Part shown: one piece after another, positions 9,701 through 59,199 of the stretch
Position numbering within the stretch: position 1 is the stretch's first letter
Layout of the letters: every line of letters starts with the position of its first letter
NCBI GenBank assembly: GCA_002269645.1
Contig: NIVC01000283.1
Span: 496,001-560,000 of the forward strand
Length of the DNA: 64,000 bases
Direction: 5' to 3'
Source: Macrostomum lignano
Lineage: Eukaryota
The notes under the pieces: generated by a model
The model's input: only the letters and a program-made list of their open reading frames with translations
Told to the model about the DNA's origin: nothing
The model's database searches: none
Translations under genes and position numbers: made by a program

Positions 9701-10722
9701 AGCGTTTCTCAGGATTTGGGGAGGAAAATGCAATTTATTCTACTTACAGGAGTAAGCCTTAGGTTGCTCCTGGTGGCGTGGTGTGTCCGAGCGGCAAGAC
9801 AATTTCCTACTCAGTCCGGGGAAATATAAATGGGGGAGGTAAGGGCTTCGCGATGGATTAGAGTTGCCTGGCGCGCTAATGGGGAATTCTAGTGGTTAGT
9901 AGGGAATGCTGGCATGAGGGCAGGTATAAAAAAATATATTTTTTATATTTTTATATTATTTATTTGTATTTCATTGAGAATTAAGTAGCGGGAATAGAAC
10001 GTCTAATACTAAGGGACAATTAGTCGGGGCGAGCAGTGACTTGACAGTCGATATGTCTGGGGAAGAGCGGGGAGGGGTTGGGATGCAGGGCCGATTCTTC
10101 TGGGGAAGCGCTCACGGGAGGAAAGGGAGGGAGAGTGACTGTGCGTCTCTACTGTACGCTCCTCTGAAAAAGGAAGGAAGGCTGACGAATACTAAATTCT
10201 ATTTTTAGCACAACTGTTCATCTAATGCTCGAGAACAGGATAGGAGTATTGGAGCCAAGTGGCAAACCAAGCGAACACAAGTTATCTTTTCTACCGTATA
10301 TTTTCTTGCTTGTATAGAAAACTTTATAAAAATGGCGGATACATTATAACAATAGTGTCAATTTTATAAAGATACGAACATAGTTATACAAATGATAACA
10401 TGTAATAATGAGTATTTGTATTTTAGGAAAACTCACTTCATAACTAAATATTGATAAAAAGAAAATAGCATGCGTAATTTACGGAGGCACAACTTAGGGC
10501 TACCACATTACAACAAAACTGTGCACCTGGTTGAATCCGATTGCAGACAGATATTGCTCAAGAAACTCAGTCCAGATTGGCTTCTTGTTGGAAATTGACA
10601 CACATTTGCTTATTGTTAAACGATAGTAACGTATGTATAGACTTATTGTCACTATCGTTTAGCATACTCAACTAGAAGCATTGTTTAACGCTGAAGCGTT
10701 GTTTAATGCCGATTGTTTAACG

Positions 10723-11240
10723 ATGTCTCAGCGAATCAGAAACGTCCTAGACTGCGCAGGTTTTGGCCAGAGACATCGACAACGACATCGACACTGCCAT
10801 AGGAAGCGCTATGGAGCGATTCCAACTGTACCATAGACTATCGAGTGAATATATAGTAGAGAAATGCAGGGGACTGTGGCTTGATATAAGCTTGCTTGCT
10901 TTAACATCAACCACTAAAATGCATCTAATAAATTGGAAAAATCTGCCTACTGATTCTCTTAACGGAGTAAGCGAAATGGATTTCCTTTCTCTGCTGAGTG
11001 CAACCGACCACGCTGGCGACGCTGACCTAACGGAGTTCATCCGTTTTTTTTAGAAGATCCTACGATGGATGACCATTCGGTTCTGGATACACCCCTACCG
11101 AATATATAAGATGACGCTCCTCTGACGGTTGGCGACCTGGATCGCATTGAAATCGATTCGCTTCCTAAATCTACGCGAGAACAGATGTTCCAACGTGGTA
11201 AAGCATTTGTGGATTTTTTTAAGTAGACAAACGGAACTGT
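10723..11240 (+). pseudogene. Putative 5' fragment of a Crypton-like tyrosine recombinase
   Basis: After a frameshift at the poly-T (~11045) the frame reads DLDRIEIDSLPKSTREQMFQRGKAFVDFL. This resembles the N-terminal helix of the Crypton at 27019 (RDSRIPKTTATKVRSNWNKLCAWY). No catalytic domain follows. Confidence 0.35.
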
Positions 11241-13699: not shown

Positions 13700-16127
13700 A
13701 ATATCTGAATTGTAGCTAAACTACTTTTTAGCGAATCCAGAAAAATATTGATTGTTCTTTGCGAGAGTTCGATTGCAGCACAGAAACAACGGACAGTAAG
13801 TCAGCAAGTTCCATATGGTCCATGAACTACGAGGACTTCAATTAAGCCCAAAAAGACGCAAAATGAATTTTAAATTATTTGGGAATCATCACGCGGATAA
13901 ATAAATATAAAATTTAACTTTTTATGCGATAAGCTTACTATTGCTAAACTTCATAAATAGCATCAATTCAGTTAAATATATCAGATTGTTTTGAGTGCAA
14001 TCGCTTATTTAATGACAAAACACGTAAATCAAATTAGATTTTTATGACAAATTTAATAACGAAGTGGCTGATAAATTCATTTCATATATGGACTACTGCT
14101 ATAATACTGCTCTCTTAATAGAATTATAGCATTATTGCTATGAAGAGAAATTTTAGGCATGGCTACATTGCATAGACAACGAGCAAAGACAATTGTTAAA
14201 AGAGCAGAACGAAATTATTATCTTTTCTAATTTGATGTCACCTGAACTAAAAACCTTGATAAAAAGAAGCTTATGCATTAAAAAATGATCGAGTCAGGCT
14301 AATTTAATGCTTTACTGCTTGAAAATACACGCGCCGTACTTAAACAGGCTATAGTGTGCATGCATATACATGTATATGTTTCAACATCAAAGTGTTCAAC
14401 TCATTCCATGAAAGTTAATCTCGGGATGCTGAAGCTCGATTCTTTATCACAATAAGCTTCTTCAAATAATTTTTGTCGCTCGCGTTTGTGCAAATGTAAT
14501 TTAATTACGATACTCAATTGCTAAAATCGCAATTAAATTATCACGCCAATTGTAATTAAAGCAAGAAAAAAAGTTTCCTTGCAATTTTGCCAAGAAAAAC
14601 AATTTTCTTATGTTTTTTTGTAATTTCCGACAATAAAATTGCAATTGTGATATTATTTCTTCGCAATTCGGGTGTCAGGTGTGCTTCCAAAATACGATAC
14701 AAAACACCGTGTATGTTGGATTGCTTCCGCTCAATGTCGTTGATTCGAAACAGCAGTTTGCGAAACCACTCTGAAACAATATTTAAAAGCATTTTGTTGG
14801 AGACTTTCGCTAAGCTTCAGATTCATAAACCAAAATACGAGTTCAAGAACTCACGTTGTATATTGGCACACTGGTAGGAATTATTGTTGGTTAAATTTCC
14901 GCCTAAAACGTTAGCCTGCAGCTCTTCGGTAGAACAAGCAGCTTCATTAGGTCCAGTAGAATCGATTGCTCCGGTTTGCTGCTAAAAGATTGGCACAAAA
15001 ATGCAATGCAATGTAAATTAGAATGAAGTTTCTCTACTTCCAGTTACCTAGCTAATCTGAAAATATTGCTGTTATGCATGGCCCAAACGCAATTTTATAC
15101 CAGAGCCACTTTCGTGTATGAGTTCTTACACTATCCAGTAAAGGCGTTTGACGGACCTCAGACGACTCCAAAGTGAACCCCAAGCTCATTCTCGAATGTT
15201 GTGTTTCTGGAGGCACGACTTCGTGACGAATAGCATTGCCAGCTGCACTACAACTGCCCCCCCCCATGACAGAAGTCATTTGAGCATTGGAGTCGCAGCA
15301 TTGGAGCAGTTCTATAGCATTAGAGTTGCGCGAGCTCATCTGGTTGACCTAGGAGTTAAAAGTAAAACTTATACTAAATATAGCTAAGAAAAAAATTGCA
15401 CTTTGCAAATACTAGCTCACGGGATTAAACTGGCAAGTTTTAGTAGAGACAAGGGTGGATTTGGCATTGTGAGAATAGAAAAATTATTAAGTAACAAACG
15501 TACATGATAAAGCAGTTCACTATATAACAGGGACAAAGCTGATAGCTAAGGACTTCAAAATTATCTTTTAAACAACGCAGGACTTTATAAAGTAGATGTT
15601 ACAAACCGATTCTATCTCTTCTGAAAGCGCCCTTAACGTCGATACCATTAAAGCGGCAGCGGGTGACTTAACTGAAGATTAAAGGGGTGCTTTGACGATG
15701 CTTCTTTTTAGCGGGCGACCTGTACTCCTCTGAGAGTCGAATAGAAGGGCAGCGGCTTCGAGCACGTAATTCGCTTTCGCTTTCGCTGCTAAGTGTGCCT
15801 TTTTGCGAAAACTTCTTTTCGAGCCGCCGCAGCTTTTCGATGTTATCTTGCAAAAAGAGGTAAAGATAAGAAAGTTCAGTGCGGATGAGAAAATTAAAAA
15901 ATAAATAAATGAGAAATAACCCATTCTCTATTACCATCGGAAAAGACTGTATTCGTCTTGTAGCGCTTCCATTCGGGATTCAGTGGTGTTTGATCACGGC
16001 AGAATTCGCCTAACTTTCGGTAAAGATTTTTTGGCGGGAAAAATGACTGGTCATCACGAACCCATGAAGATGGAACAACGGCTGAGGGTTCACCCGGCTC
16101 TTCATAAAACTCGATTATGGAGAACAT
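13700..16127 (-). pseudogene. Degenerate multi-exon DUF4806-type accessory gene (EnSpm ORF2)
   Basis: First exon FSIIEFYEEPGEPSAVVPSSWVRDDQSFFPPKN…PLNPEWKRY is the typical V-x-F…VP-x-x-W…PP…W N-terminus. Later exons (LRRLEKKF…, LLFRINDIERKQ…) decay leftwards, so the left boundary is approximate. Starts ~70 bp after the transposase stop. Confidence 0.6.
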
Positions 16128-16197
16128 CTGAAAATTTAAGCATACAAAGCTAAGAATTCAAGTGAATTCAATTTGTGCAGTTGCAACAGACTAAAGG

Positions 16198-18108
16198 TCA
16201 AATAACAAAAAATAATGTCACAAAGATGTACCGAAGTGTATTCAGGACTGTACATGCATAATATTCAGACTCCTTTTGAGGCACAGCAGAAAGCTTAGAC
16301 TGCACAACGTGTGCCTCAGAAACTTGAATCCGCCTTTGCAGTCCAAAGAGACGATAAATTCCTATTTTGGACGACTTAAATAGTAGACTATAGAAGCTTT
16401 CACACACAGAGAACTGTTGATAAGCTAGCAATGTCTCTTGACTGGATATATTTTGCAGAATATTGATCAACTTGCAGGCTTTAAATGTGCCATTGTTGTC
16501 TCTCATAGTAAAGAAAGCATCTCGTTGCTTTAGTGACAGCTTTAGATCCTTGCTTAGCGCAACTTGCTTGAACATAGCATGCTCCTTACAGAAATCAGGT
16601 AATTTATAAAGCCTAGTAAAATGCTGGCTGGAAACCTGTAGAAAGGTAGTAGTATCAATGGTCAGCCTGCCTAGGCATTGATTCGTCTCCAAAACTCTGT
16701 TTGCTAATTTGCTCCAAAGGCTAACGATTGAAGTTTTCAAAGATGAATGAAGAAAACTGTTCAATGGGCCTCTACGAGGCCTCCTCGTATAATCTTCTAC
16801 GAGGTGCTGAAGACCATGCACAACAGGACTGAAGAAACTGCATCCAAAAAGGTCATCGACACAAGAGTAGAAGTCGCAAAATATCTTATCTAAGATGCAT
16901 TTCTGGTTATGGATAACATTTTGAGTATTTAGCGACACTGCAATTAAATGCAAACACAAAAACGAACCCATCAAACGTGGGTTATCCCTAGGCATAAAGT
17001 GAGGCAACACAAGTGGAATCAGATATATAGTAAGAAATCTGATTTCTGTTGCCTTCCAGAGCCGAATATGCTTAAATGCCTTGGGTTTCCTTTGAAATTC
17101 TGAAGGGACATACCTTCCAATTTGATTTAAAAGACAACTTAATTCCTTCTCACAAGCATTATTCAGGTGGAATGGACCAGTATGCAGAAGCAACAAAACT
17201 TTTAATGAGACACCTTTGTAGAGAACATGCAATGAATCCGTTGTAAATGAATCATTCATGTTCACTGGCAAATACTCAATTAAGAGCTTGGAAACCCTGT
17301 TCTATGATGCTCTTCTTGATCACGAGAACGAAGTGACTGGTCAGTTCGCCTTAATGCATTTCTTTCTGGAAATACAATGCTTCTAGATTCTTCACTGTGT
17401 TGCCCTCGAGTGGTGCAACGATCACATAAAAAATACCCGGTTACACCAGTAGTTTTTTCACAAAATTCTTAGCTGGCATGTCACAAATAATCCATTTTAA
17501 AGCTATGTTTAGCTGATAACCATAGATGCTAAGTGGCTCATTGCTGATAACAAGTAGTTCCTGGCAGAGTTGTTTCAAAAATTAATTTGAAGAGTCCGGT
17601 TTGTTGCTTCCATAATAAATACCAATAATGAAGACAGAGTTTGGCACTTCATTAATAGCACCTAGAATAGTCCATAGTCCAGAAACAGAACTTTGGAAAA
17701 GAGGTACTTCATCAATGTTTAATGACAAAGTAAATTCTTGAGCAGTTTGAAAGTTCGATTGCCCTTTAATAGTTGAAAAAATATACTTGATTCCTTTGAT
17801 AACTTCAAAATGGCAATATTTCCCCGGCTGAATGTCAAAAAATTGAAAAGTTCCTTATTCTCTAAAGAAGGCTTGAGTAATGTTTTTCCAGTAGCAGGCA
17901 AACTTGGAATACGTTTCTTCAAAATCTTTAATAATGAAGTCAAATCTAGCTTAATATTGCATGTTGTAGCCCAAACCTGAATTTCTTTTTGAATAGCCAA
18001 GTCTTCACTTAATTGCTCATAGGAAAAGTTTGAAATGCTTGAAAGAGATCCATCACAACTACTAGTAATATTGCTTTTGTCAGCCCAACTGAGAATAAAG
18101 CCACCCAA
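16198..18108 (-). pseudogene. Second CACTA/EnSpm (CMC) transposase, with stops and frameshifts
   Basis: Motifs QVWATTCNI…LPATGKTLL, NIDEVPLFQSS…LWTIL, ICDMPAKNFVK, RTDQSLR…EEHH, VPSEFQRKPK…WKATEIRFLTIY and SPVVHGLQHLVED…GPL. Confidence 0.92.
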
Positions 18109-24900: not shown

Positions 24901-26744
24901 GCTAGCTTAGAAAAACAAACCATCTCAGAGAGTTCTGGTTGTTCCAGACACAGCAAATTGGTAGTCAGATATTACCGCGATTTAAATCACTGCGGAGGCA
25001 TTGAGTCATTAGTGCCTTACCGTCTTTATTATTTCGGTGTTCGTCACAATGAATTGTTAATATATTTGTGATAGATACAATAAATGTACATAGCATGCGC
25101 GATAAGCAATTATTTAGGCCCTAGACAAACCTACTTGGAGCGTTCGGAGATTTTAAAGCTATTGGCCCTAATTGCCTATCGCCGGTCGGCGAGTCCTACC
25201 AGTCTTTCTCCAATAGTCGCAGGTACAGTACAAGAAAAGAAAGAACGCGAGGGAACACGAACCGAATATATTTAGAGAGTGATACTACCAATGAGAATAG
25301 CTAATAAGTAATTGACTTGACGATTTAATTTGACAAGTTATATCAAGTCACAAGGTTCTTAATACGATTCACGGCGCAGATAAATTGACACTGATGATAA
25401 TAACGATTAATAACTAATTAATTACGCAACTTGCAAGCGGATCTCAGCTGAAGAAGAAGAAACCGAACAGGACCACGGAGAAGACTCCTAACCCCTGGCC
25501 TAAACCAGAACCTACACTCGAACGAGAGCTCCGCCGAATTGACCGTTCAACGGAGCACTGACTAAATTCTATCAGCACTGCCCTTCAGTGTGACACTGAG
25601 GCCCTCAGGATCGAGGCCACGTACTTGGTCAAATCCGACAGTCTCTATCTAACCGCGCTTGATAGCGACGACTTCAGACAAATTTTCTGTAGACGTTACG
25701 CTACAAGACTGAAGCGGTCGGGCGGGGGACAAAAATATGGACCGGGGGTGATGAACTCAAGCGCCTCAAAGCGCGAACCAAAACAATCGGGCAAGCGGCC
25801 GGGAAGCTGGACAAAACCAAGAACCGGGGAAAGAAGGCGAGATCCGATTGCCAAACACACTTTCATATATAGTCAGAGTCAAACCCTCAAACCCCCCCCC
25901 CTCAAGCCGGGTGGTGGTCGTCTGGCCGGCCGCCCGCTAAGCTGAATTGCACTGTGCCCGCGGCGCCGGGTAGACTTGGATTTTGCCGCGTTGCCAGGGT
26001 CCAGGCCGGTTCTGATTGGCTGGCCGCGCAAAGCCGGGGTTCGCAGAAAAACTCAACCCTCCGCTGAGTCACAGAATTGGCGTCTAACTTCTAACCTGTT
26101 GACGCAAAATAAGCTGTAACTAACAAGAAAAGTACATTAGACCGCGTGACTAAATTGAAGCAAAATAATAATTCAATAACAATAATACAGAAGCTAACTA
26201 AATAATAGAATTCACAAAAGATGCTTACACTGCATATTGTATAATGAAATTTAAATTAAATTTAAATTGGTGCAAAAGCATACATTGCTAATATATTTCA
26301 TAATTCAGTTTGCCACTGCTTCTCTTCTTCTTGCTTGCATTTCTCTATTCAAACATAGATCTACCAAAAAGTTTTAAAGAACAAATTAAAGGAGGGAGGA
26401 AAGTTCTCATGTTTGGGTATTAAAATAGGCAGAAAAGTAGCTTTAATACCAACTTACTATTAAATGGCTAAGCATTTGCAAAGATATTGAAACTAAATAC
26501 TTTTTTGCACTAAACATGGCTTTCCTAGTACGCCCAATGAGAAAAAAAACATTAAAATAGGCCTAGCCCCAGGCAAGGTCTTTAGCTAATATTATCAGAA
26601 ATTGACAGTTTATAGCAAAATTTTATTAAAAAAATACAACCCGGAACCTAATTATGCTAAAAATATAGATAATATTTTTTCGACTTGCCAAGACAAACTT
26701 GCCACGAACGCACGCCCACTCTATATTGAAATTGCAGTAATGGG

Positions 26745-28589
26745 TTAAATGTGTAATAAACCACTGAAACGAGGAGATACTCTATGGCAAAATCTCCGAG
26801 GCGAGTATCTCCTCGTTTCAGTGGTTTATTTTAATTTAATCAACAGCCTGTAAGCCTCGAGGCAATCTATATTTAGCACGAGTTAATCTCCGGCGGAGAT
26901 TTAAATCTCCGCTTCCTGTATTGTCTATGGTAAAATACTAAGTCTAAATCAAAGAGGACTGATGGTTTAGGAAGAGAGAAGCAAACTGTGAAATAAACAA
27001 GCCACAAATTTTACCAAAATGGAGGAGCTAACCGCTGACGATTTAATGGAAGTGATGCAAACGATTACCAATGAAGAAGCGTCTACAGTGCAAAGCACTA
27101 GCACCAACGTTGACGTCCGGCTTGCCGAATTTAGAGACTCGCGAATTCCAAAAACAACGGCCACAAAGGTTCGTAGCAATTGGAATAAACTGTGCGCTTG
27201 GTATACTGACTGGTGAGTGCGCCAAACTGCTCAGTTGAAAGTTGTGAAGGATATGTTCGAGTGGAGCAAGAAGGAATGGGACTACGTGCTGCAGTGCTTT
27301 CTGCTTAAACTGCGTAAAGACAACGGAGATATGTACCCGCCTGCCACGATCAAAGGTTTTGTCGCCAGTGTACAGTTCCACCTACGTACAAACAAAGTTT
27401 CTGCATGATTGGTCCATCTTCAAGGACAACGAGTTCGTCCTAACCAGGCAGTGCATCGACGCCGCCATGAAATTAAGTGCCAAATCAGGTTTTCATCTTA
27501 CACCAAAGCGAGCGAGGGTAATCGGCCTAGACGAAGAAGTGCAACTCTGGGCAGAGGGACGTTTCGGAATGTCTAATCCGACGCAGCTGGTGAATACCCT
27601 GCTGTACCACTTAGGTCTGCACCTATCGCTCAGAGCGAGTGCTGAACATCGCGCGTTAGAATTCGGTGAGCGATCGCAGCTTGTGCTCGTCAAGGAAAAT
27701 GTCACTGAATGTCTGGTGTACACCGAGCGAATGTCGAAGAACGGGAGAGTTGGTTTGCACAAGGCACACGTTGAGCCGAAAACAACCAGGATCTATTTGA
27801 ATGGCGACCCAGACAAATGTGTCATCACGATGTATAAGACCTACGTTCGTCACCGGCCGGAGCAATTCGGACTCAAGGGTCACTCTGCGTTCTATCTGAC
27901 ACCGATCAAGGCGCCGACATCTGATATATGGTATCGTAGTCAACCAATGGGTGTGCATACGATAGAAAACGTCGTGAAGAATCTGTTCTCTGGCAAGCAG
28001 ATTGTAGCCGGCAGTACGACCGGACCTATCACGAACAGTAGTCTGCGTCGGACCTGCAAGACTAGGTTGGTGGAAGGCGGCATCAGTAAGGAAATAGCAA
28101 GCCAGAAGACTGGAAGGATTACCGAAAAGGCTGACAGGTCCTACATCGACCTCCGTAAGTCAGAGAATAACATGTCGGCAGTACTATATGGAGAGCCCAC
28201 TGCCGCAGCCAAAACGAGCGGCGTGAGTGAGGTTGCAACAGCAATTGCCAACGGCAACTCCAATATTTCCGGACCGCAGGCTTTGGCTCTAAGTCAACAA
28301 TGGTCCGCCCCTGTACTAACCTTCTACGGGCCAACCACGATCAATTTCAGTTCCCCGACAAACAAGATGCAATAGTGATAGCAATAAAAAGTTGTAGACT
28401 AACGAACTAAAAGAACTATAACTGACTAACTATAACTGACTACCGTTTTAACGTTCAATAAATATACGTGTTCTTGTTTTACTATCAATTTTAAGTTTGT
28501 CTATGTTAGCGGAGTTAACGCTACCAATAATCTCCGCGAGCTTAACACTAGGGACATAGGCAAGGCGAACAGGCAAAGTTGATTAAATG
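26745..28589 (+). mobile_element. CryptonA element with 7-bp terminal direct repeats (TTAAATG) and a 28-bp-stem hairpin
   Basis: TTAAATG at 26745-26751 and 28583-28589. Perfect inverted repeat 26755-26782/26803-26830. ATTTAATCAAC (26834) pairs with GTTGATTAAAT (28578). Contains a DUF3504-type recombinase gene. Confidence 0.75.
27019..28375 (+). pseudogene. CryptonA (DUF3504/KIAA1958-like) tyrosine recombinase, one frameshift at ~27400
   Basis: Motifs FLLKLRKDNGDMYPPATI, LHLSLRASAEHRAL, MSKN, FYLTP…WYRSQPMG, ITNSSLRRT and KTGR…RSY. ORFs 27019-27216, 27217-27408 and 27359-28375 join with one indel. Confidence 0.92.
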
Positions 28590-28715
28590 GGGCAAACGCG
28601 TCAGTAACTTGATAGTCTATGGCTGTCTTCCATGCATTTAAATGGGGCAGAGTCATCAGTAGTGCTTATGGGGCAAAGTCGTCAGTAATGTTTTAGCTGG
28701 GGCAGACGCGTCAGT
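28588..28715 (+). repeat. Four direct 18-bp repeats, consensus TGGGGCARASKCRTCAGT
   Basis: Copies at 28588-28605, 28643-28660, 28669-28686 and 28698-28715. Confidence 0.9.
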
Positions 28716-28936
28716 TAGATGGTTTTGAAAAGAATAACTACTTATAATCGTATAATCGTTGAATTGATTGATTGACTGCTTTACCTTTCAAATATAAGTT
28801 TTTACCTAAAATACTAAGTGTGGATTTAATATTACTGAGCGGCGGCAGCAGCGATGGAGTCGAGCTGGACAGAAGCCTGTACATATGATTTGCCAGTTAT
28901 TAATTGGATCACCGCATTGTGTGCTGTCGTAACAGA

Positions 28937-31197
28937 ATGTCTTCTTGGCAAGACCAGTTTACGGACAGCGACGACGAGCGCATCGCAGCTGCATTAGATG
29001 AGTACGAGCAAGAGAGAGCCGCTGCTGCCCAGAATACGACTGCAGGCCCCGTGTCTTCTGTCCGCAAGCGGGAAGTTTCCGCCGATGGTATCCCACCTGC
29101 TGGTCAGCCGGCACAGAAACGGCGGAACGCCACGACGGACGACGAAAAATCCGACGACGAGTTCAGTGTGCTGGCGTTTAGTAGAGCTACGCAGCGGCTA
29201 CCACAGCCGACACTGCCGTCACAGTCAACAATGCAGCAGCAGTCATCCGCCTCCTACGAGCTTGATGAGATGGACTCGGACGACCGGGCGGCCCTCAACG
29301 CCATGCTCGACTACGAGGCGTCCATAAGCCCTGCCGTGCCGCAGCAAAAACCGCCGCCGGAACCTGCTGCAGCTGTCGCCAACCCTGCCGAGCTCTCAAC
29401 GCTGCCGAAACCGCCAGCAGTAGCCGCCGAGCTGCATCGTCAACAGCAGCAGCAGCAGCAGCAGCAGAAGCAGACTGAAGGGCAGCGATTAACGCAGCAG
29501 AGGGAGCCGTACTCGCAATGGTCAATGCAGACCATGCCTCTGGCGAGCCAACGACGGACCTGGAACCGGCCTGAAGCTCGAGCCGCCGCCGAGGAGCTTC
29601 GACCGGACGAACTGTCCTCGTTAAGCTACAGCCCGCCGTCATCTGCTGAACAGTTAATTCGAATGCTACAGCGCTCGGAGTCTGGCAGTACCATCAGCAT
29701 CAGCAGCAGCTCCAGCTCCCGACGCAACAGAGGCGCAGCGGCAAACGGTCGAGGCAGAGGCGTCGGCGTCCGACAAATCGGCCAGAATCCGCTGCTGCAG
29801 GCCGACGCGTTCCGCCAACAGTTCACGGTCACTCGATCAGCTAGCCGTTCGCTACCGCTGTATGGTGCCGCTCCGGTACAGCGGCTGGTTGAGGACACCG
29901 GAATACTAACTGTGCGGCGCTATCTGCACGTCTTCCACATCGATAATTTGCGCTTCATCGGTGAGTAGTAGTAGTAGACTACTCTTCTCCCTGCTTAACT
30001 TTATACTTATGCATGCAACGCCACAACAATCCCATGTCAGGCCGTGCAAAGGTGTACTTGGGCGAGGCGCTCGAGCCGCACTGCACCGAGTTGCTATTGG
30101 CGTCCAGTCCGGAACTTAACGTCGGCATGGACGAGTCGTGTGACCGCCGGCTAGTGGAGGACCCGCTGGCTGTCGACGAAGAGCAGCAGCAGCAGCAGCA
30201 GCACCAGCAGCATCGCACCTTGTCGGGCTACATTCGGCTTGTGACCAACACCGCCGGCTGGCACGTTTACGAGCTGCTGCACAGACTGCTGCCGGGATCC
30301 GAGGTGGGCCGAGGTTTCGTGCTCAACAACCTCACAACGCTGACAGTCTGCGGTGTGCGTTCCCCTGATACGATTGTGCGAAGTCTTACGCAGCACGACG
30401 GATACCCGCTCCTGGTCGGCATTGGCGTATCTCAATGCAGCATGCTGGTGCAGGCAACGCGCTGGGTGCTCTCCTACCCGCGGACGGCCAGCCTGCCAAA
30501 TAATACCGATGGCTTTCTGCTAGCTCACCAGCAGATGCGGGCGGCACTCCTTACGATGTTTAAGGATATCCAGCGCCAGCGTCGCATCCGTCAGGAGTGC
30601 CTCCAACGCTGCTCGGCTTGCTCAGAAGCACTGAAGCAGACAATGCGACACCTGAAGCACCGTCAGTGCCCGCTCCGGGTGGCCGTGTGCAATGCCCTAC
30701 TCCGGACATCAGGTGTCGTGTACCTTTACGGGCCATCAGGAGTCGGAAAAACCACGGCCGTTGAGCGCTACTGGGGCCTAGAGCGAGTATTCTGCCCAGC
30801 AATCAAGCCTTTCGGTGGCAACTTCATATTTGATGGGTTCGACATCAACAGGCACTCTGTCATCTTCATTGACGAAATTCGGCCCCAATATTTTGAAGGG
30901 AGTAGTGACCTACAAGCGACGCTACTGCGACTGTTGAATGGGAACTCGTTTCTAATTAACGCGAAGCATCAATCGCATGTGTACATCGACTGGGCGCAAA
31001 GACTCATAGTCCTGGCCGGGCACGCCTCGCCTGAAGAATACAGTCCGGATTTTCAGCGCCGGCTGCGAAACGAGAATAATGTCGCTATAGAAATGGATCA
31101 CGACATTGAAGAATGTCATGGGGAGTGCCAGCCAGTACCTGATGGCGCCTACGCTGCTGACGCCGCCGACGATGAGCCCGACAATGGCATGTACTGA
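28937..31197 (+). CDS. Spliced Rep/NS1-like protein with C-terminal SF3 helicase (~726 aa; intron 29961-30040)
   Basis: Donor ATCG|GTGAGT at 29961 and acceptor ATGTCAG|GC at 30040 join the ORFs in frame. Walker A LYGPSGVGKTT, FIFDGF, Walker B VIFIDE, LLRLLNG…INAKH and arginine finger FQRRL. Preceded by a C-x2-C…H…C cluster. No stops or frameshifts. Confidence 0.85.
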
Positions 31198-32422
31198 TCT
31201 TTTGATCGATCGATCGTTTAATGTTCTGTTTCTTGACTAATAACTTGGCTACTACTACTATTAGAGACTACTCTGGCCTAATAACGGTTCTTTGTTTAAA
31301 AATCAATCAATTCATTTATTCAGCTAGCCAGCCAGTCAGTCAGCTTTTCCCCCCTCCCCCGATATTTTTTCGCATAGTTTAAGGCCTTCTTAAGCCTATT
31401 GTTCCTGTATATTGACTATACAGTTTTCCGTTGACTAAAAACTGCAGGTATGAAGATTTCTTACCTTGTTGATAATAATATTGATCCACAACAATGGACA
31501 ACAGCGATGAGCAGCGGTAGATGATTAACAACAACGGCGGCAGAAGAAAAAAGACGTAAAAAAATCAAATAGCGCGCCAAAGCAGAAAGCTTAGTCTCAA
31601 TAATAAAATCTCTATATAACTATCAATCGTATCAGAAAAAGAAATTAAACGCTAGCTAGCTAGCTGCTGTTAGGGATGCGACTTAAATCTTCCTTGTCTT
31701 TACAGTCGAATACATTAATACTTTATGGCTTTAAGTTTGATTACATCTATAAATAACTGATGCATTTACATAATAAATAATAATATAATAATAATAACAT
31801 TGAACATCTGATCGCGCAATATCAAAAGATGAAAAAATTTATAAACAATGGCTGGCTAACTAACGCATGTCCATCGTACAGTTCATAGTGCGCGCATAAT
31901 TCCCTAAAATAATACGAATAGCTAAATGGATCGAGTCCCTTATAATTTTATAGTTTAATGCGCGCACTGTCAACTGTACGTAATTTTCATGCTCTCGAAC
32001 AATTAACACAGTATAGGCAATGATGAGTATAGCGGTAACAAAAATACGAGCATACAAGCATATCTGATTGCACAAATCGAACGCGTACAGTTTATAGTGC
32101 GTGCACAACTCCTAAAAATATATAAATGTGGAAATTGATTGACATTTGCAAATCTCTTAATTTTTTAGAGTTTTATGCGCGCACTATCGACTGTACTAAT
32201 AATTATATTGCAATACTATAACTGAAAACTATGTCAACAATTAGTACATGCAGAGTCTGTAGCGGTACATAAATAAAAGCACTGCCAAATAAATTAATCA
32301 TTGAAGAACGTATAAAGCGCGCACATTATACGTTATTGTTATTAATTAATTAATCAAGTTAGTGAGAACCTAGCATTCAACGCTGCCCGCGCATCACCTT
32401 AGCCTGCTGCTGCTGCTGCTGC

Positions 32423-32693
32423 TGTTGTTGTTGTTGTTTCGGTGACGCACCCGCGCCACCGGCCGACGTTAGGCCGATTTCCGTCCTCCTCCGGGCTCGG
32501 GTGGGAGGTCCCGGTACCATCTCCACATGGCCAAGGCGTTCTCCTGACTCCTGCTGAGGTCCGACAGCCCGTGCACACCAAACCGGCCCCTAGCTCTCAC
32601 CGTCGCGGCGCACTCACACACATGCTGCACCGTTTCCTCCTCGCACCCGCAGGCCCGGCACATGCCGCTGGTCTCCTTGCCGATCCTCTTCCG
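32423..32693 (-). mobile_element. 5'-truncated non-LTR retrotransposon 3' end with (CAA)5 tail
   Basis: Reads RKRIGKETSGMCRACGCEEETVQHVCEC…ALAMWRWY*, the C-x2-C-x8-H-x3-C Zn knuckle of LINE ORF2 C-termini. A short 3' UTR and a (CAA)n tail follow. Flanked on both sides by (TGC)5-6. Confidence 0.8.
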
Positions 32694-34742
32694 TGCTGCT
32701 GCTGCTGCGAGAATTCAGCTGCATCAGCCCTTCTCCTCCGCCGCTGACGAATTCCGTGCAATATGGAATCAGCACGCTGGGTCGGCCGAATCGCAGCGGA
32801 ATACTCTTCGCCACAGTCGCCGCCACCGCTGCCATTACTGCCAGCGAACATTGCTGCTCGTCGGACAACAAGAGCGGAGGATATTGCCGCAGCAGCGCCG
32901 CCGTCGACGACTGCTGGAGCAGATACTGGGGCGGCAGATGACGATGTTGACGACGACAAAGATGACATTCCCATCGCGGAGCTGTTGCCAACCGCCTGAC
33001 ATGAGCGGACCACGGCGCCCATTTGCAGAGCTCGGTGCGCATTATAACCGTAATTACGGTATACAACTGCAGCAGAGGTGCCGTGGGCGCGTGCAAATGC
33101 GTGCAGCTGCGCAGGCTCCATCGCCAGGACAACGCTGCTCAAGGTCCGGCGCCAGTCTGTCGCTACAATCGCTCTCCTTCGGCGCTGATCATCCGGCTGA
33201 AGGCGCTCTCAGTGTAAACCCGGCCGAAGATGTCCAGAAACACCGTGGACACCTCGACCGCAGGAGCAGCAACTCCGCGCGCAGCCAGGCTCGGCTGGAT
33301 ATAGCAGTCGTGCAGGCGCAGCAGGGCGTCGCAAAACGTATCCGACAGCACCATGGTAGCCGGCTCGCCATTGTGCCCGGCCTTGTGCGGAACCTCTGTC
33401 AGCGGCATCACCAGGTGCGAGTGACCCTCCAGATCGGACTCCGTGGCGCTGATCGAGGTGTCCCGAAACAGCTGATCCATGTCGTCAGCTGCCCGGTGTC
33501 GCACCCTACGGTCCAGCAGATGCTGTCGCCGCAGATAGATCCACGGCAGGAGTCGCACTGGCTGTTCGACACTGCAGAAGAACAAGCACTCCTGCACGAT
33601 GCGGCGGACACAGGCCACCTTGGCGCATAAGTTCTCATCGCCGGCGTCTGCGTGGTCGTCGGCGGCGGCGGCGCTCAGGTTGCCAGTCTCCGGCAGTCTC
33701 TGCCAACTGTGCTCGAAGAGCATCTTAAAGAAGCGGTCGCGCCGGTCGAAGATGGCGCCGACCTCGCTCCGCTTAACGTAGCTGGCCATGTAGGTCATCT
33801 GACGACCGTGATGGCCCAGCTTGTTCAGCTGTTCCTGCAGGGAGCGGATGGCGGCAAACTCGCCCTTGGCCTCGTTCAGCAACGAAAGCAAGCGTGAGAC
33901 TGTCAGCTGCCTGGCAGCCAGCGAATCCTTACAGCAGTCGTCACCGCCGCCGCCATCATCTTTGCTGCTATTTTTTCCCTCGCTCAAAATTTCTGACTGG
34001 CGCAGCCCGATTGCGTCGAGCACCTTTTGGAAACAACGGTTGCCGCGCACATTCAGCCAGCCCTCCAAACACAGAAAAATCGACACCATCTCTTGGCACT
34101 TGCGGCCGGCTGTTGAAGGTGCCAACTTTAACTCCTGGGCGACAACCTCAAGCCCGGAGACACTGGCGACGAGGTCGGGTCGCAGCACTAAGTCGGCCAG
34201 AGTCAGCTGCTTCCGAAGCCAGAGCCGTTCCAGCGTGGCGCCAACAGAGCAGCAAATTTTCTGCCAGCGACGGCTGTGGCTCTGGTTGGCAGAGACGTGC
34301 AGTTTAACTGGTGCGGACCACCAGAGTGCTGTCAATCGACCAAGCATGGCATCAATGGACGGTCGATCTGCTGCTACTCCAAGGGCCACCTTTCTGGCGG
34401 GGTGCTCTTTCGGTGGTAAAGGTTCCAGCCTGAAATAGCGTCGGTGCTGTCCTCCTGGTTGCAGCGTTTTTCCGTTTTTCCTTTGTTCTATCTCGCCTTC
34501 TTTCTGCGAGGAAGCAGCAGCAGCATAATCAGAGTCACCAACCTCAGGACTAGTCGGCTGCTGCAACTCGGGCGCCGCTATTTCCAGTGGTTTAGACGCA
34601 ACGACGGCACTTAGGTCGGAAGCTTTGTCGTTCAACTGAATGCAATCAGTAGTCGGCTGCTGCTGCGGCGACACAGGTATTAAACTGCTGCAGGCTGCTC
34701 GTCCCATTGAATCTGCAGCAACCATCAGACGATCGTAGATCG

Positions 34743-35125
34743 CCCCGTCGTCGTAATATTCTGCTGATGCTCTTAACGCAGCAGACCTCATTGCCCCGTC
34801 GTCGCCATCCTCTGCTGATGCTCTTAACGCAGCAGACCTCATTGCCCCGTCATCGCCATCCTCTGCTGATGCTCTTAACGCAGCAGACCTCATTGCCCCG
34901 TCGTCGCCATCCTCTGCTGATGCTCTTAACGCAGCAGACCTCATTGCCCCGTCGTCGCCATCCTCTGCTGATGCTCTTAACGCAGCAGACCTCATTGCCC
35001 CGTCGTCGCCATCCTCTGCTGATGCTCTTAACGCAGCAGACCTCATTGCCCCGTCGTCGCCATCCTCTGCTGATGCTCTTAACGCAGCAGACCTCATTGC
35101 CCCGTCGTCGCCATCCTCTGCTGAT
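34743..35125 (-). repeat. In-frame 51-bp VNTR (SAEDGDDGAMRSAALRA x7 plus a partial copy) within the recombinase
   Basis: Near-identical tandem copies read directly; the frame is preserved. Confidence 0.97.
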
Positions 35126-37459
35126 GATGTCACCGCAGCAGACTGATGCTCGGTTGTCACTGGCCGATGGACAGATAATGGGCATAGATGAGCTCGCAGT
35201 CGGCGGCGTGACTGTCCGCAGGCGGAACAAACGCCTATCACTTCTAGGCGATGACTGGCCTTGGTGCTGCGGCTGCATTTGATTGCCAGCCAGATCATGT
35301 CTTGCCGCTGTTTGGTAGTTGCGGCCGCCCATTCGTTCTCTGTTGGCCGCATCCGCTCCGGCATATCACTAACTTTGAACGATATATTTCTCGTGCCGGT
35401 TTTTGTAGTGCCTCTTTAGATTTCCACCGGGCACGCACTCACAGCACAATGGGCAGACGGAGCTTCTTCTTCCAGAGGGCATCTTTCTCTAATAATTATT
35501 ACAAATCAAAGGATACAGTGTTGGAAAAAATACCCGGTCCCCATCCAGCATATATATATATATGTAGAGATATGTAGAGATAGGAGCTTCATATTTAAAG
35601 CATTCTCCCTTAACCCGCCTCCTCATATTTCATTGATAGCAAGCTTATTGGCTTTCAGCTCAGTCAAGTGATCACTATTAAACGATTGACTTAATAACTA
35701 TTGGTTAAATCAACTGCAGGTCTGGGCTTGGCTGGCTGGCTGGCTGGCTTGTACTCTTCTGACTGAGTAATTTGATGCTTTTTACCATAGACTAAAGTTT
35801 ACGGTCTAGCCCTCACTAGTGGAATTTTCCGTAGTTTCTTTTAACCATAGACTGCTGCAGACCTGTCCGCTTGGGTTTATAAAACTCAGTCAGTCCCTTC
35901 CCTCCGTCAAACTGCAAGCATCAGCGCCCCAGCCTAGCCTACAGTTTCTACAGCTTTTCGAGTAAGTTACATTCATATCTGCTGCTCTGTGCATTATTCT
36001 ATTACGAAAACAATCAGCTTTCACTACAGGGCCCTTACAGGTGCTGCAGTTACAGGTGGAGCAGCAGCCTCTCCCTCTCTCTGATATAATATATACCCCT
36101 TTGTAATTAATTTGAACATGCAGCTTTTCTAACATTTTCTATTCGCACTTAACTGCTGCTATGCCTCTAATCAGTATACATATAGTATTGGAGCGAAATA
36201 ATAAACGTGTCAATAATCAGACTGTTGTCAATCAATCAATCCATCGCTTTACACCAAAAGCATGGAACCTGTACTGTACGTATACATACACCGCTGCTCT
36301 GATTCGCTGCAATATCAACACAGAGAGTGAATTCGTGTGTTCGTGCGATTATAGCGCAAAAACCATAGACTTGTTATTATCAGCTAAGCGAATTGCATAA
36401 ACTGATGCTGCCAATCTAAAAATAGCCACAACTGGCTAGCTTATACTTGGTGGAATTTCGTGTTTCATTTCTTGTTATTAAAGAGGCCGGATGAAAATGT
36501 TTGATTTCTGAAAAAAAGCTCGATTCATTAAAAAACGCTGTTGCTTCCGGTTGCTTCTGCGCTTGGAAATATAAAACTGAATAATAAGTGTTTTTTCGCG
36601 CCTCTGCAGCTTTTGATGTGGCTCAAATGAGCCTAGGGAAACCGGATAAGAACCGGATAATTAGGAAAGTAGTATAACAAAATTTGTGGAATTCCGTATG
36701 CCTTGCAGGGCAAGACTACCACGCGAAAAATTGTGGTATGATTTAGTTCGTCTAATAAAGGATAGTATAAACTTTCCTTCATACTGTGACTTGACATTTT
36801 GCATTCGTTCTGGGGCGATTGTCTTTTCGAAGTATCGCAATATGATGCCATCCTATTGCATCAGTAATAGCTAGAAAATAAAGGTAGAAGGAATTAAATC
36901 TTATATATCGAGTCTAGCTGCTTAGCTTTATAAATTGATGATATAATAATTTGATAACTAGGTAAATTCAAAAGTTTTTGTGCTGATAAAAGTAAAATAT
37001 TTGTTAAAACAAATTAGACCAGCCGTAGAACAAAAGACAACGTGTATAACATTTACCGACCGATATTTCGACCGATATTTTAGTGTACTAAAACAAAATT
37101 TACAGCAACTAGATTTTCCAATTTTTTCTGCTAAAATTACTATTACAAACAAATTATTTTTGTTTTTTATTATTTAGTAATCATAAAAAACAATCAAAAA
37201 ACAATTATTTCAGGCCATATTTACGTATCATAAAATGCAGCTCATCTTTTATGAGGACTTGAATTTCAACACTAAAATACCATAAAAGTAACAAATAATT
37301 TTTTTTTTCAATCACTCCACCTTCAAATTAACTGCTGAAGTCAGAATAGTGCATGAACTAAAAAGACAAAGCTTTAACAGTTCTTGTTAAACATTAGAAC
37401 GCAACATAATAAAATGTTTTCATAGTACGAGATATTAGCTGCAAGAATAGGCCAAATTC

Positions 37460-59193: not shown

Positions 59194-59199
59194 AGGCCC

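What the first reader, a model, noticed from the sequence alone, without database searches (positions are those of the whole stretch)
28588..35860. Candidate new integrative element: tyrosine recombinase plus Rep/NS1-like SF3 helicase
Seen: two large convergent genes, a spliced open helicase gene (28937-31197, +) and a ~900-aa YR (35364-32377, -). They sit in one GC-rich island with iteron-like repeats and a TAATATTAC nonamer at the left, double hairpins in the middle, and a 10-bp inverted match between the ends (TAGTCTATGG 28613 / CCATAGACTA 35785). Established: Cryptons encode only a YR, DIRS adds RT, Helitrons use HUH plus an SF1 helicase, and small SF3 helicases of this type are replication proteins of CRESS-DNA viruses and parvoviruses. 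Inference: the YR excises and integrates a circle while the helicase supports its replication, like a eukaryotic integrative plasmid or capsid-less virus. No capsid ORF is visible. I know of no standard TE class with this two-gene layout, but could not search for one.
Basis: partly seen in the sequence, partly recalled or inferred. Interest (0 to 1): 0.9.

Follow-up and report, generated by a model that had tools for sequence, protein, structure and literature searches.

The report
Dead-nuclease Rep helicase gene pair, flatworm
A flatworm genome carries, in at least two places, a bounded two-gene DNA unit: a virus-type replication helicase whose DNA-cutting site is lost, and a large unknown protein; the unit looks like a decayed integrated replicon, but the claim that the second protein is a tyrosine recombinase could not be confirmed.

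Summary
The window is Macrostomum lignano DNA. The two convergent GC-rich genes are real. Gene 1 (28937-31197, one 80-nt intron) is a Rep/NS1-type two-domain protein. Its SF3 helicase keeps Walker A, Walker B and the Arg finger. Its HUH nuclease domain has lost the His-x-His and catalytic Tyr positions, as have its nearest relatives. Gene 2 (35482-32597, minus strand, two frame breaks here) has no detectable homolog or domain in any search. Its tyrosine-recombinase identity rests only on a short motif resemblance.

The pair recurs in the same order and orientation at a second M. lignano locus (L001) with unrelated flanks. There, gene 1 differs by dS about 0.05 and gene 2 by dS about 1 or more, with omega 0.1-0.2. 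So the two halves have different histories.

The four iteron-like repeats are real and conserved. So are the two central hairpins: their 22-25-nt arm site recurs (23/25) beside a 44%-identical Rep-like gene from another organism. The TAATATTAC nonamer is chance. The 10-bp inverted "ends" are a motif that is 8-fold enriched across the window.

A genuine Crypton-type (DUF3504) gene lies just to the left, but it is a nested insertion absent from L001.

Verdict: a low-copy, decayed, replicon-like element. The recombinase part is unproven.

The parts
26699..26751 (.). Left terminal segment of the block shared with L001. A nested insertion separates it from the rest of the unit.
   Evidence: About 94% identical to L001 7881-7935. 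Similarity to L001 stops sharply to the left of it.
26752..28582 (+). Nested Crypton-like insertion, not part of the two-gene unit. It is flanked by the 7-bp direct repeat TTAAATG and has a 28-bp-stem hairpin at its left end (26755-26831).
   Evidence: Absent from L001, where the two flanks are contiguous. Hairpin z-score -12.6. Short terminal direct repeats are the Crypton hallmark (PMC3212892).
27019..28375 (+). Crypton-type YR-family gene (QRICH1 and DUF3504 domains) inside the nested insertion. It is broken by one in-frame stop and one frame break.
   Evidence: Pfam DUF3504 at 1.6e-24 and QRICH1 at 3.7e-06. Eight homologs of 290-460 aa, one of which also hits PF00589.
28583..28716 (+). Four iteron-like 24-nt direct repeats upstream of gene 1. 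The first copy reads TTAAATGGGGCAAACGCGTCAGTA.
   Evidence: the repeat finder family D1, 75-100% identity. TRF also finds it. Three copies are kept in L001. The region has no significant fold (z -0.23).
28613..28622 (+).
   Evidence: Present and conserved in L001. The motif is enriched across the whole window.
28937..31197 (+). Gene 1: Rep-derived protein of 726 aa. Exon 1 is 28937-29960, the intron is 29961-30040, and exon 2 is 30041-31197. It is intact in the window.
   Evidence: splice; identity.
30079..30387 (+). HUH-nuclease-like domain that lacks the catalytic residues. Motif II reads TLSGY where relatives have H-x-H. Motif III reads SLTQHD where relatives have Y-x-T-K-E-D.
   Evidence: Column table: 10 of 10 distant homologs keep the first motif II His (9 H-x-H, one H-x-Q), and 9 keep the Tyr. 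None of the near relatives keeps either (0 of 4 for motif II, 0 of 6 for motif III, counting the window). The model has a beta-alpha-beta-alpha-beta-alpha order.
30700..31092 (+). SF3 helicase domain. Walker A is GPSGVGKT, Walker B is IFIDE, and the Arg-finger region is FQRRL. The motif C column has Gly-His where relatives have Ser-Asn.
   Evidence: Model pLDDT is 80-97 here. PDB and BFVD fold matches.
31875..32337 (.). Cluster of inverted-repeat sites between the two genes: hairpin 1 (31875-31980), hairpin 2 (32085-32196) and a palindrome (32304-32337). The arm copy at 31875-31896 reads CGTACAGTTCATAGTGCGCGCA.
   Evidence: The arm site recurs at 23/25 in L003 next to a 44%-identical Rep-like gene (score 20, null maximum 16, window controls 11-15). 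One copy is kept in L001.
32597..35482 (-). Gene 2: a large protein of about 950 aa with an N-terminal C2H2-like zinc finger, a CxxC..HxC knuckle, a 17-aa acidic repeat, a conserved C-terminal domain of about 420 aa and a low-complexity tail. It has two frame breaks in the window.
   Evidence: Omega is 0.10-0.19 at dS 0.9-1.6 against the L001 copy. No homolog or domain was found.
32984..34188 (-). Conserved C-terminal domain of gene 2. It carries the YR-like pattern D-W-R-R-T, then 19 residues, then A-H-G-T-S, then a Tyr 8-13 residues later.
   Evidence: 66-83% amino-acid identity to L001. The resemblance is at motif level only. All homology tests were negative.
34742..35143 (-). A 51-bp tandem repeat, 7.9 copies, inside gene 2. 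It encodes a 17-aa acidic repeat.
   Evidence: TRF score 741. Absent from the L001 copy.
35785..35853 (-). The shared block fades out at about 35870.
   Evidence: The core CCATAGACTAAAGT is identical in L001 at 18627, inside otherwise unalignable DNA.

Best explanation
The region is one copy of a low-copy, roughly 7.3-kb two-gene DNA unit of Macrostomum lignano. In the window it spans about 26699 to 35870 and is interrupted by a nested Crypton. It is best read as a decayed, integrated replicon-like element that descends from a small Rep-encoding DNA replicon.

Shown:
- Gene 1 is a Rep-type protein. Its SF3 helicase keeps Walker A, Walker B and the Arg finger. Its HUH domain has lost the metal-binding His pair and the nicking Tyr, so it cannot start rolling-circle replication the way CRESS-DNA or parvoviral Reps do.
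- The unit carries two kinds of conserved repeated sites: four iteron-like repeats upstream of gene 1, and a cluster of inverted-repeat hairpin arms between the genes. The second kind is conserved next to a distant relative's Rep-like gene.
- Gene 2 has evolved under purifying selection and stays linked to gene 1, tail to tail, at two loci.

Inferred:
- The dead HUH domain acts as a site-specific DNA-binding (origin-binding) domain on the repeated sites, and the helicase melts and unwinds there. This is the division of labour seen in papillomavirus E1 and polyomavirus large T, whose origin-binding domains are inactivated HUH domains (PMC6668415).
- DNA breakage and joining for integration or resolution would then fall to another protein. 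Gene 2, a zinc-finger protein with an R..RRT..H..Y-like tail, is the only candidate in the unit. I put its being a tyrosine recombinase at about 0.3.

Both known copies carry broken reading frames, so the copies seen are probably inactive.
For: - Organism and second copy.
- Collinear pair with unrelated flanks and a sharp left boundary.
- Rep/SF3 identity.
- Loss of the HUH and Tyr residues in the window protein and its nearest relatives, against retention in 9 distant homologs.
- Splice model supported by the intron-less relative L003.
- Iterons conserved in L001.
- Hairpin arms are significant and recur next to a 44%-identical Rep-like gene in L003.
- Gene 2 under purifying selection (omega 0.10-0.19 at dS 0.9-1.6).
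- Both genes share an unusual GC content of 0.57-0.61.
- Diverged Rep-like paralogs exist in M. lignano (P0003, 49% identity), and three diverged ones occur in a single metagenome sample. This is a multi-lineage family, as expected of a mobile or viral element.
Against: - Only two copies could be examined. No empty site, target duplication or defined right end was found.
- The two halves differ about 20-fold in synonymous divergence, so the unit did not simply duplicate as a whole.
- Gene 2 has no detectable relative anywhere, and the YR assignment failed or was inconclusive in every test.
- No Rep-like relative outside M. lignano could be shown to have a gene 2 neighbour. All those contigs are 3.4 kb or shorter.
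- The helicase motif C Asn is replaced, so ATPase competence is uncertain.
- Omega for gene 1 is only 0.35-0.55, on few substitutions.
- The frame breaks could be long-read assembly errors.
- No evidence of any extrachromosomal form was available.
Confidence: 0.5

Rival explanations
1. Chance or secondary juxtaposition. An endogenous Rep-like viral or element fragment (about 26699-31650, with its iterons) lies next to an unrelated old multi-copy gene or transposon (gene 2). The pairing at two loci would come from segmental duplication followed by gene conversion of the left half, or from site-preferring insertion next to the hairpin cluster.
For: - dS is about 0.05 for gene 1 and about 1 or more for gene 2. 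Identity steps down near 31647: 93%, then 85-87%, then 72%.
- In L003 the hairpin cluster lies upstream of the Rep-like gene, not between two genes.
- Rep-like endogenous elements are common in eukaryotic genomes.
Against: - Same order, orientation and tail-to-tail spacing at both loci, with unrelated outer flanks.
- Both genes share the same atypical GC content.
- The conserved hairpin site sits exactly between the genes in both copies.
- Independent insertion next to the same gene twice would itself need a specific mechanism.
Confidence: 0.25
2. Domesticated host genes. A Rep-derived helicase that lost its nuclease was exapted for a host function, and gene 2 is a lineage-restricted host gene. 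The block is simply a duplicated host segment.
For: - The dead-nuclease version is conserved as a clade. The motif III column pattern x-x-T-Q-x-D recurs in the window protein, P0004 and P0009.
- Gene 1 has an intron and a long low-complexity N-terminal exon.
- Gene 2 is under purifying selection.
- P0001 is annotated from a transcriptome-guided annotation.
Against: - Both copies of gene 2, and the L001 copy of gene 1, carry frame breaks or stops.
- Several nested insertions are tolerated in and around the unit.
- Gene 2 is not annotated in either proteome source.
- Conserved iterons and hairpin-site arrays are not expected for an ordinary host gene.
- Several diverged family members occur in one sample.
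Confidence: 0.15
3. One reading: a Crypton-like tyrosine recombinase (gene 2) plus a Rep helicase form an integrative plasmid with a CRESS-type nonamer origin and terminal inverted repeats.
For: - The pair is linked at two loci.
- A YR-like pattern, R-R-T, then 19 residues, then H-G-T-S, then Tyr, is conserved in both copies. Its spacing resembles the R-R-T..G-R/H..Y tail of the DUF3504 family aligned here.
- The inverted 10-mer is conserved in both copies.
Against: - Every homology test for YR was negative, and the model was unusable.
- The His of the H-x-x-R position is absent.
- The nonamer is chance and is not conserved.
- The 10-mer is a motif enriched across the window.
- The Rep lacks nicking residues, so a CRESS-type origin would have no function.
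Confidence: 0.2

Closest known systems
Rep proteins of CRESS-DNA viruses (Cressdnaviricota, e.g. PCV2 Rep) and parvoviral NS1 / AAV Rep68
   Same: Gene 1 has the same two-domain order: an N-terminal HUH-type fold, a linker, then an SF3 helicase. The family profile hits PCV2 Rep (1.8e-10), AAV Rep40/68 and B19 NS1. Foldseek gives near full-length matches to Cressdnaviricota Reps and parvoviral NS1. More distant sequence homologs on 2.0-2.7-kb contigs keep all the HUH motifs.
   Different: The His-x-His and catalytic Tyr positions are substituted. The motif C Asn is replaced. There is no stem-loop origin and no capsid gene. The gene has an intron and a disordered N-terminal exon of about 340 aa. 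It is chromosomal and linked to a second large gene.
Papillomavirus E1 and polyomavirus large T antigen (initiators with an inactivated HUH domain plus an SF3 helicase)
   Same: The logic is the same: a catalytically dead HUH-fold domain fused to an SF3 helicase, with arrays of repeated and palindromic sites nearby. The profile hits E1 helicase at 6e-9 to 2e-8. The precedent for the HUH domain switching from an enzymatic to an origin-binding role is in PMC6668415.
   Different: There is no specific sequence affinity to E1 or LT beyond the shared SF3 core. There are no capsid or regulatory genes. The unit sits in an invertebrate chromosome. Binding of gene 1 protein to the repeats is inferred, not shown.
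Cryptons (YR-only DNA transposons; the CryptonA / DUF3504 group)
   Same: The nested insertion at 26752-28582 fits. It has a single DUF3504/QRICH1 gene and short terminal direct repeats; no inverted repeat between its two ends was looked for.
   Different: The two-gene unit itself does not fit. Gene 2 shows no similarity to DUF3504 or Crypton YRs (hhalign probability 0.5%), and Cryptons encode no helicase.
Integrative replicons with a YR integrase plus an SF3 (primase-)helicase: phage-satellite elements of bacteria (the fold search returned the SaPI5 primase-helicase) and YR-bearing Polinton-like viruses of eukaryotes
   Same: The proposed division of labour is the same: a recombinase for integration plus an SF3 helicase for replication. 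The SaPI5 primase-helicase appears among the fold hits. PLVs with a YR and an SF3 helicase are described in PMC5499653 and PMC11296320.
   Different: There is no primase domain and there are no morphogenetic genes. The helicase here is Rep-derived rather than D5/primase-type. The recombinase identity is not established.
Helitrons and Replitrons (eukaryotic HUH transposons)
   Same: They are chromosomal eukaryotic elements that encode a Rep-superfamily protein.
   Different: Helitrons use an active Y2 HUH domain plus an SF1B helicase. Replitrons use an active Y1 HUH domain without a helicase and were described from plants, algae and protists (PMC10288648). Here the HUH domain is dead and the helicase is SF3.

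Membership tests
Tyrosine recombinase (gene 2) | Significant sequence or profile similarity to a YR catalytic domain (PF00589, DUF3504 and similar) | tested here: not met
   There was no hit in Pfam, PHROGs or NCBIfam at E up to 10, in the PDB phmmer or hmmsearch runs, or in the 5.8-billion-protein search. hhalign against the DUF3504 alignment gave a probability of 0.5%.
Tyrosine recombinase (gene 2) | The catalytic R-H-R-Y tetrad (plus Lys and His/Trp) in the canonical order | tested here: inconclusive
   Candidate Arg (YLRRQ), Lys (VPHKAG), R-R-T, A-H-G-T-S and a C-terminal Tyr are conserved in both copies. There is no His three residues before the Arg. With only two sequences, the columns cannot be validated.
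Tyrosine recombinase (gene 2) | YR / topoisomerase-IB-type catalytic fold | tested here: inconclusive
   The single-sequence AlphaFold2 model had mean pLDDT 36.5 and is unusable.
Rep (HUH endonuclease plus SF3 helicase) of CRESS-DNA viruses / parvoviral NS1 (gene 1) | SF3 helicase domain with Walker A, Walker B, motif C and an Arg finger | tested here: met
   Walker A is GPSGVGKT, Walker B is IFIDE and the Arg-finger region is FQRRL. The motif C column has Gly-His instead of Ser-Asn. Profile and fold hits go to PCV2 Rep, E1, AAV Rep and NS1.
Rep (HUH endonuclease plus SF3 helicase) of CRESS-DNA viruses / parvoviral NS1 (gene 1) | HUH motif II and the catalytic Tyr of motif III | tested here: not met
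   The window protein has TLSGY and SLTQHD in those columns. No near relative keeps H-x-H (0 of 4, counting the window) or the Tyr (0 of 6). All 10 distant homologs keep the first His (9 H-x-H, one H-x-Q) and 9 keep the Tyr.
CRESS-DNA virus genome | Stem-loop origin with a conserved nonanucleotide in the loop, and a capsid gene | tested here: not met
   The nonamer at 28827 is not in a stem-loop (z -0.45), is expected by chance (0.73 per window), and is not conserved in L001. No third ORF exists in the shared block.
Crypton (the two-gene unit) | A YR as the sole or core gene, short terminal direct repeats and no TIRs | tested here: not met
   A YR was not demonstrable for gene 2. The ends of the unit are not defined, and there is no direct repeat at the two boundaries.
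Crypton (nested insertion 26752-28582) | A DUF3504/YR gene, short direct repeats at the termini and no TIRs | tested here: met
   DUF3504 at 1.6e-24 and QRICH1 at 3.7e-06. A 7-bp TTAAATG direct repeat flanks it, and it is precisely absent from L001. The absence of TIRs was not checked by a direct comparison of the two ends. The gene carries one stop and one frame break.
Helitron | Y2 HUH Rep fused to an SF1B (Pif1-like) helicase | tested here: not met
   The helicase is SF3 by sequence and by fold, and no HUH or Tyr is present.
Polinton-like virus / virophage-type element | Jelly-roll major and minor capsid genes and a packaging ATPase | tested here: not met
   The shared block holds only two genes. 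Gene 2 is predicted to be largely helical (low confidence). No capsid-specific structural search was possible.

The most novel reading that the evidence does not exclude
This would be an animal chromosomal copy of a previously undescribed kind of integrative dsDNA replicon. A Rep protein has lost its nuclease and become an E1/large-T-like origin-binding helicase, an independent replay of the step thought to have produced papilloma- and polyomavirus initiators. The DNA cutting and joining would be supplied by a linked, highly divergent recombinase (gene 2), which acts on the conserved inverted-repeat site cluster.
Probability: 0.2. Interest if true: 0.85.

Novelty: new variant of a known kind. 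Interest (0 to 1): 0.55.

Why it matters
Inactivation of the Rep nuclease, with the SF3 helicase kept, is the proposed key step from rolling-circle ssDNA replicons to dsDNA replicons such as papilloma- and polyomaviruses. Few intermediates or parallels are known.

This family has a whole clade of dead-nuclease Reps, conserved cis sites and a tightly linked second gene under selection. It offers a second, independent case that can be studied by sequence, structure and distribution alone.

If gene 2 proves to be a recombinase, this would be a two-gene layout (recombinase plus Rep-derived helicase, no capsid) that no eukaryotic transposon class covers. If it does not, the finding is still a well-bounded endogenous Rep-like element with unusual features.

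Tried and rejected
1. YR identity of gene 2. I tried the 5.8-billion-protein word-indexed search; Pfam, PHROGs and NCBIfam at E up to 10 on the whole protein and on domain pieces from both copies; PDB phmmer and profile searches; and hhalign against a 9-sequence DUF3504/Crypton alignment. All were negative. The AlphaFold2 single-sequence model had pLDDT 36 and was not used for fold search.
2. More copies or relatives with context. Two metagenome scans gave nothing (gene 2) or only marginal unrelated SF3 hits (helicase). Viral-contig scans with gene 2, with the helicase and with the 22-nt site gave nothing. The locus of the third M. lignano paralog, P0003, is not on record. Seven relatives' contigs were fetched; all are 3.4 kb or shorter and none holds a gene 2 homolog.
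3. CRESS-type origin at the nonamer: rejected.
4. Hairpin or origin structure in the iteron region, at the left terminus or in the right motif region: none.
5. Terminal inverted repeats. An inverted copy of the left terminus at 36307-36345 scores only marginally (18 against a null maximum of 17) and has no counterpart in L001. I did not adopt it.
6. A zinc-finger (zf-RVT-like) motif read in another frame downstream of gene 2 has no Pfam hit and is not conserved in L001. I dropped it.
7. tRNA or other RNA genes as integration targets: none in 20-42 kb.
8. Replitron, Helitron and PLV membership: rejected on domain content.

Full report
ORGANISM AND SETTING
The helicase ORF is 95% identical to a Macrostomum lignano hypothetical protein, BOX15_Mlig013629g1 (P0001). 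The window is therefore flatworm nuclear DNA. The two genes form a GC-rich island (0.57-0.61) in AT-rich surroundings of 0.35-0.45. Elsewhere the window holds an eIF2B-like ORF and a reverse-transcriptase ORF. No tRNA or Rfam RNA lies nearby.

GENE 1 (28937-31197, plus strand)
- Two ORFs are joined by an 80-nt GT..AG intron (29961-30040) that preserves the frame. A relative from a JGI metagenome contig (L003) has one uninterrupted 444-aa ORF across exactly this junction. This supports the splice model.
- Pfam alone gave only weak AAA and DUF5906 hits. An exhaustive HMMER search of 1.84 billion representatives returned 25 proteins. Their Pfam domains are DUF5906, PPV_E1_C, Parvo_NS1, RNA_helicase (PF00910) and, in one case, Viral_Rep.
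- A profile of the family hits PCV2 Rep (1.8e-10, both domains), other replication-associated proteins, papillomavirus E1, AAV Rep40/68 and parvoviral NS1.
- An AlphaFold2 model built on 26 sequences has mean pLDDT 77, rising to 80-97 over the helicase. In BFVD it matches Reps of uncultured viruses and Cressdnaviricota and parvoviral NS1 over 370-460 alignment columns. In the PDB it matches AAV2 Rep68, E1, B19 NS1 and the PCV2 Rep ATPase.

THE NUCLEASE IS DEAD
- In the family alignment, the distant homologs with an N-terminal domain come from 2.0-2.7-kb Logan contigs. They all show motif I (hydrophobic-x-T) and motif II (nine H-x-H, one H-x-Q), and nine of them keep motif III, Y-x-T-K-[EQ]-D.
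- The window protein has TLSGY and SLTQHD in the motif II and III columns. Its nearest relatives (P0004, P0006, P0009, P0013, P0014 and L003) also lack the His pair and the Tyr (none of them keeps either).
- Walker A, Walker B and the Arg-finger region are kept. The motif C Ser-Asn is Gly-His in the window clade.
- So this is a clade of Rep-derived proteins that keep the helicase but cannot nick DNA.
- The known precedent is E1 and large T, whose origin-binding domains are inactivated HUH domains (PMC6668415).

GENE 2 (35482-32597, minus strand)
- The long minus-strand reading frame is real, but in the window it is interrupted by two frame breaks. It ends at 32597, not at 32377.
- From the N-terminus the protein has a C2H2-like zinc finger, a CxxC..HxC knuckle, 7.9 copies of a 51-bp repeat that encodes an acidic 17-mer, a conserved domain of about 420 aa, and a low-complexity tail.
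- Every test for what it is came back empty:
  - the 5.8-billion-protein search;
  - Pfam, PHROGs and NCBIfam at E up to 10, on both copies and on sub-domains;
  - PDB sequence and profile searches;
  - hhalign against a Crypton/DUF3504 alignment, probability 0.5%;
  - an AlphaFold2 single-sequence model, unusable at pLDDT 36.
- What remains is a motif-level resemblance that is conserved in both copies: D-W-R-R-T, then 19 residues, then A-H-G-T-S, then a Tyr 8-13 residues on. Upstream candidate Arg and Lys residues also exist. The spacing resembles the R-R-T..G-R/H..Y tail of the DUF3504 proteins aligned here.
- This is a lead, not a test. I put the YR reading at about 0.3.

SECOND COPY AND BOUNDARIES
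- P0001 led to M. lignano contig NIVC01001938.1 (L001). BLASTN shows a collinear block:

| Window | L001 | Identity |
|---|---|---|
| 26692-26751 | 7874-7935 | 94% |
| 28583-28661 | 7929-8007 | 95% |
| 28682-31647 | 8224-11200 | 93% |
| 31647-31948 | two pieces | 85-87% |
| 32981-34410 | 15289-16767 | 72% |
| 35181-35370 | 17375-17564 | 74% |

- Nothing else in the 64-kb window matches the 20.8 kb of L001, apart from one unrelated repeat near 62.1 kb. The neighbouring genes of L001 (COG7, EME1) are absent from the window.
- The pair therefore recurs in the same order and orientation in a different genomic context.
- The left boundary is sharp, at about 26699. The right side fades because of divergence. 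A 14-nt core, CCATAGACTAAAGT, is identical at 35785 in the window and 18627 in L001.
- L001 carries extra insertions inside the unit. It has one frame break in gene 1, and one stop and at least one frame break in gene 2.
- Both assemblies are long-read based, so some of these breaks may be assembly errors.

UNEQUAL HISTORIES
- Nei-Gojobori estimates between the copies are as follows:

| Gene | dS | omega |
|---|---|---|
| Gene 1 | 0.05-0.06 | 0.35-0.55 |
| Gene 2 | 0.9-1.6 | 0.10-0.19 |

- Gene 2 has therefore been a selected coding gene for a long time.
- The left half of the unit was either recently exchanged or converted between lineages, or it arrived separately.
- This is the main argument for the rival 'juxtaposition' reading. 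It is also the pattern expected if diverged lineages of one element recombine.
- Diverged Rep-like lineages do exist. P0003 in M. lignano is 49% identical, and three contigs with diverged Rep-like genes come from one JGI sample.

CIS ELEMENTS
1. The four 24-nt direct repeats at 28583-28716 are real, and L001 has three of them. They have no significant secondary structure.
2. The two central hairpins are strong, with z-scores of -6.4 and -5.2.
   - Their arms are four copies, in alternating orientation, of a 22-nt site. The copy at 31875-31896 reads CGTACAGTTCATAGTGCGCGCA. A fifth, degenerate copy lies in the palindrome at 32304-32337.
   - The same site occurs in L003 at 23 of 25 positions. 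L003 also has a perfect 18-nt-arm palindrome that shares GTGCGCGCATAAT with the window.
   - The match scores 20. The maximum over 200 shuffles is 16, and eight other non-coding window stretches score 11-15.
   - The L003 Rep-like protein is only 44% identical, so neutral DNA would be saturated. The site is therefore under constraint and belongs to this Rep-like family.
   - In L003 the cluster lies upstream of the gene, and the contig begins inside it.
3. The TAATATTAC nonamer is chance.
4. The inverted 10-mer is conserved in both copies, but it is not specific to the element.
   - GTCTATGG occurs 10 times in the window against 1.3 expected. It also occurs twice in L003 as TAGTCTATG.
   - It lies in sense orientation upstream of the Crypton ORF, gene 1 and gene 2.
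   - A shared promoter-type motif explains it at least as well as a terminal repeat does.

THE REAL CRYPTON NEXT DOOR
- The stretch 26752-28582 is absent from L001. It is flanked by the direct repeat TTAAATG and begins with a 28-bp-stem hairpin (z -12.6).
- It encodes a QRICH1 + DUF3504 protein (1.6e-24) with eight 290-460-aa homologs. The gene carries one stop and one frame break.
- This matches the published description of Cryptons: a YR gene and 4-6-bp terminal direct repeats (PMC3212892).
- It inserted into the first iteron, and it is a separate, nested element.

SYNTHESIS
- I read the unit as a decayed copy of a low-copy, replicon-like integrated element. Its Rep has become a nuclease-dead, site-binding helicase that presumably acts on the conserved repeated sites. 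A linked large protein of unknown fold is the only candidate for DNA breakage and joining (confidence 0.5).
- The rivals are secondary juxtaposition of two unrelated entities (0.25) and domesticated host genes (0.15).
- I found no published family with this layout in the searches made. Those searches cover open literature only.
- The decisive evidence would be a genus-wide census of co-occurrence and ends, and a confident fold for gene 2.

Noticed in passing
window 26752-28582: A compact (1.83-kb) Crypton-like element is nested in the first iteron of the unit. It has 7-bp TTAAATG direct repeats at its ends and a near-perfect 28-bp-stem hairpin at its left end (26755-26831). Its QRICH1 + DUF3504 gene carries one stop and one frame break. 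Its homologs lie on 1.5-2.4-kb contigs.
   Followed up: partly
window 10831, 11619, 11775, 18160, 26923, 28615, 35785, 35845, 36363, 59554; L003 3112 and 3232: The octamer GTCTATGG is about 8-fold over-represented in the window (10 copies against 1.3 expected). It lies upstream, in sense orientation, of three genes here, and it recurs in the metagenome relative L003. It may be a Macrostomum promoter-type motif. No description of it turned up in the one M. lignano genome paper I searched by keyword.
   Followed up: partly
window 26931-26943 and 28808-28820: An identical 13-nt string, TAAAATACTAAGT, lies about 80-130 bp upstream of the start codons of both the Crypton ORF and gene 1. Its meaning is unknown.
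   Followed up: no
window 34742-35143: A 51-bp tandem repeat, 7.9 copies at 97% identity, lies inside gene 2 and encodes a 17-aa acidic repeat. The L001 copy lacks it entirely, so it is a recent expansion.
   Followed up: partly
window 36307-36345: There is a marginal inverted match to the left terminus of the unit (score 18, against a shuffle maximum of 17), about 0.5 kb beyond the right-hand motifs. L001 has no counterpart.
   Followed up: partly
L003, L009, L012 (JGI metagenome 3300040801): One environmental sample holds three contigs with Rep-like genes of this family. They are 44%, 44% and 27% identical to the window protein, so they are diverged from it. This points to a multi-lineage family in an unidentified eukaryote.
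   Followed up: partly
L002 and other Logan contigs of 2.0-2.7 kb (P0010, P0012, P0020, P0022, P0023, P0025): The nearest homologs with intact HUH motifs sit on contigs the size of small DNA virus genomes. L002 has two further same-strand ORFs (127 and 186 aa) with no Pfam hit, and it has no exact terminal redundancy.
   Followed up: partly
L001 11200-11912 and 12062-14698: The second copy has two extra insertions between the two genes. One holds a 111-aa ORF that looks by eye like a transposase helix-turn-helix. This was not tested.
   Followed up: no
window 58528-60751: ORFs with a C2H2 zinc finger (2.8e-07) and a reverse-transcriptase domain (RVT_1, 2.5e-15) point to a retrotransposon unrelated to the finding.
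   Followed up: no
window 32472-32663 (minus strand, a different frame from gene 2): A Cys/His-rich stretch looks like the zinc motif found at the C-terminus of some reverse transcriptases. It has no Pfam hit and is not conserved in L001, so it is probably spurious.
   Followed up: yes
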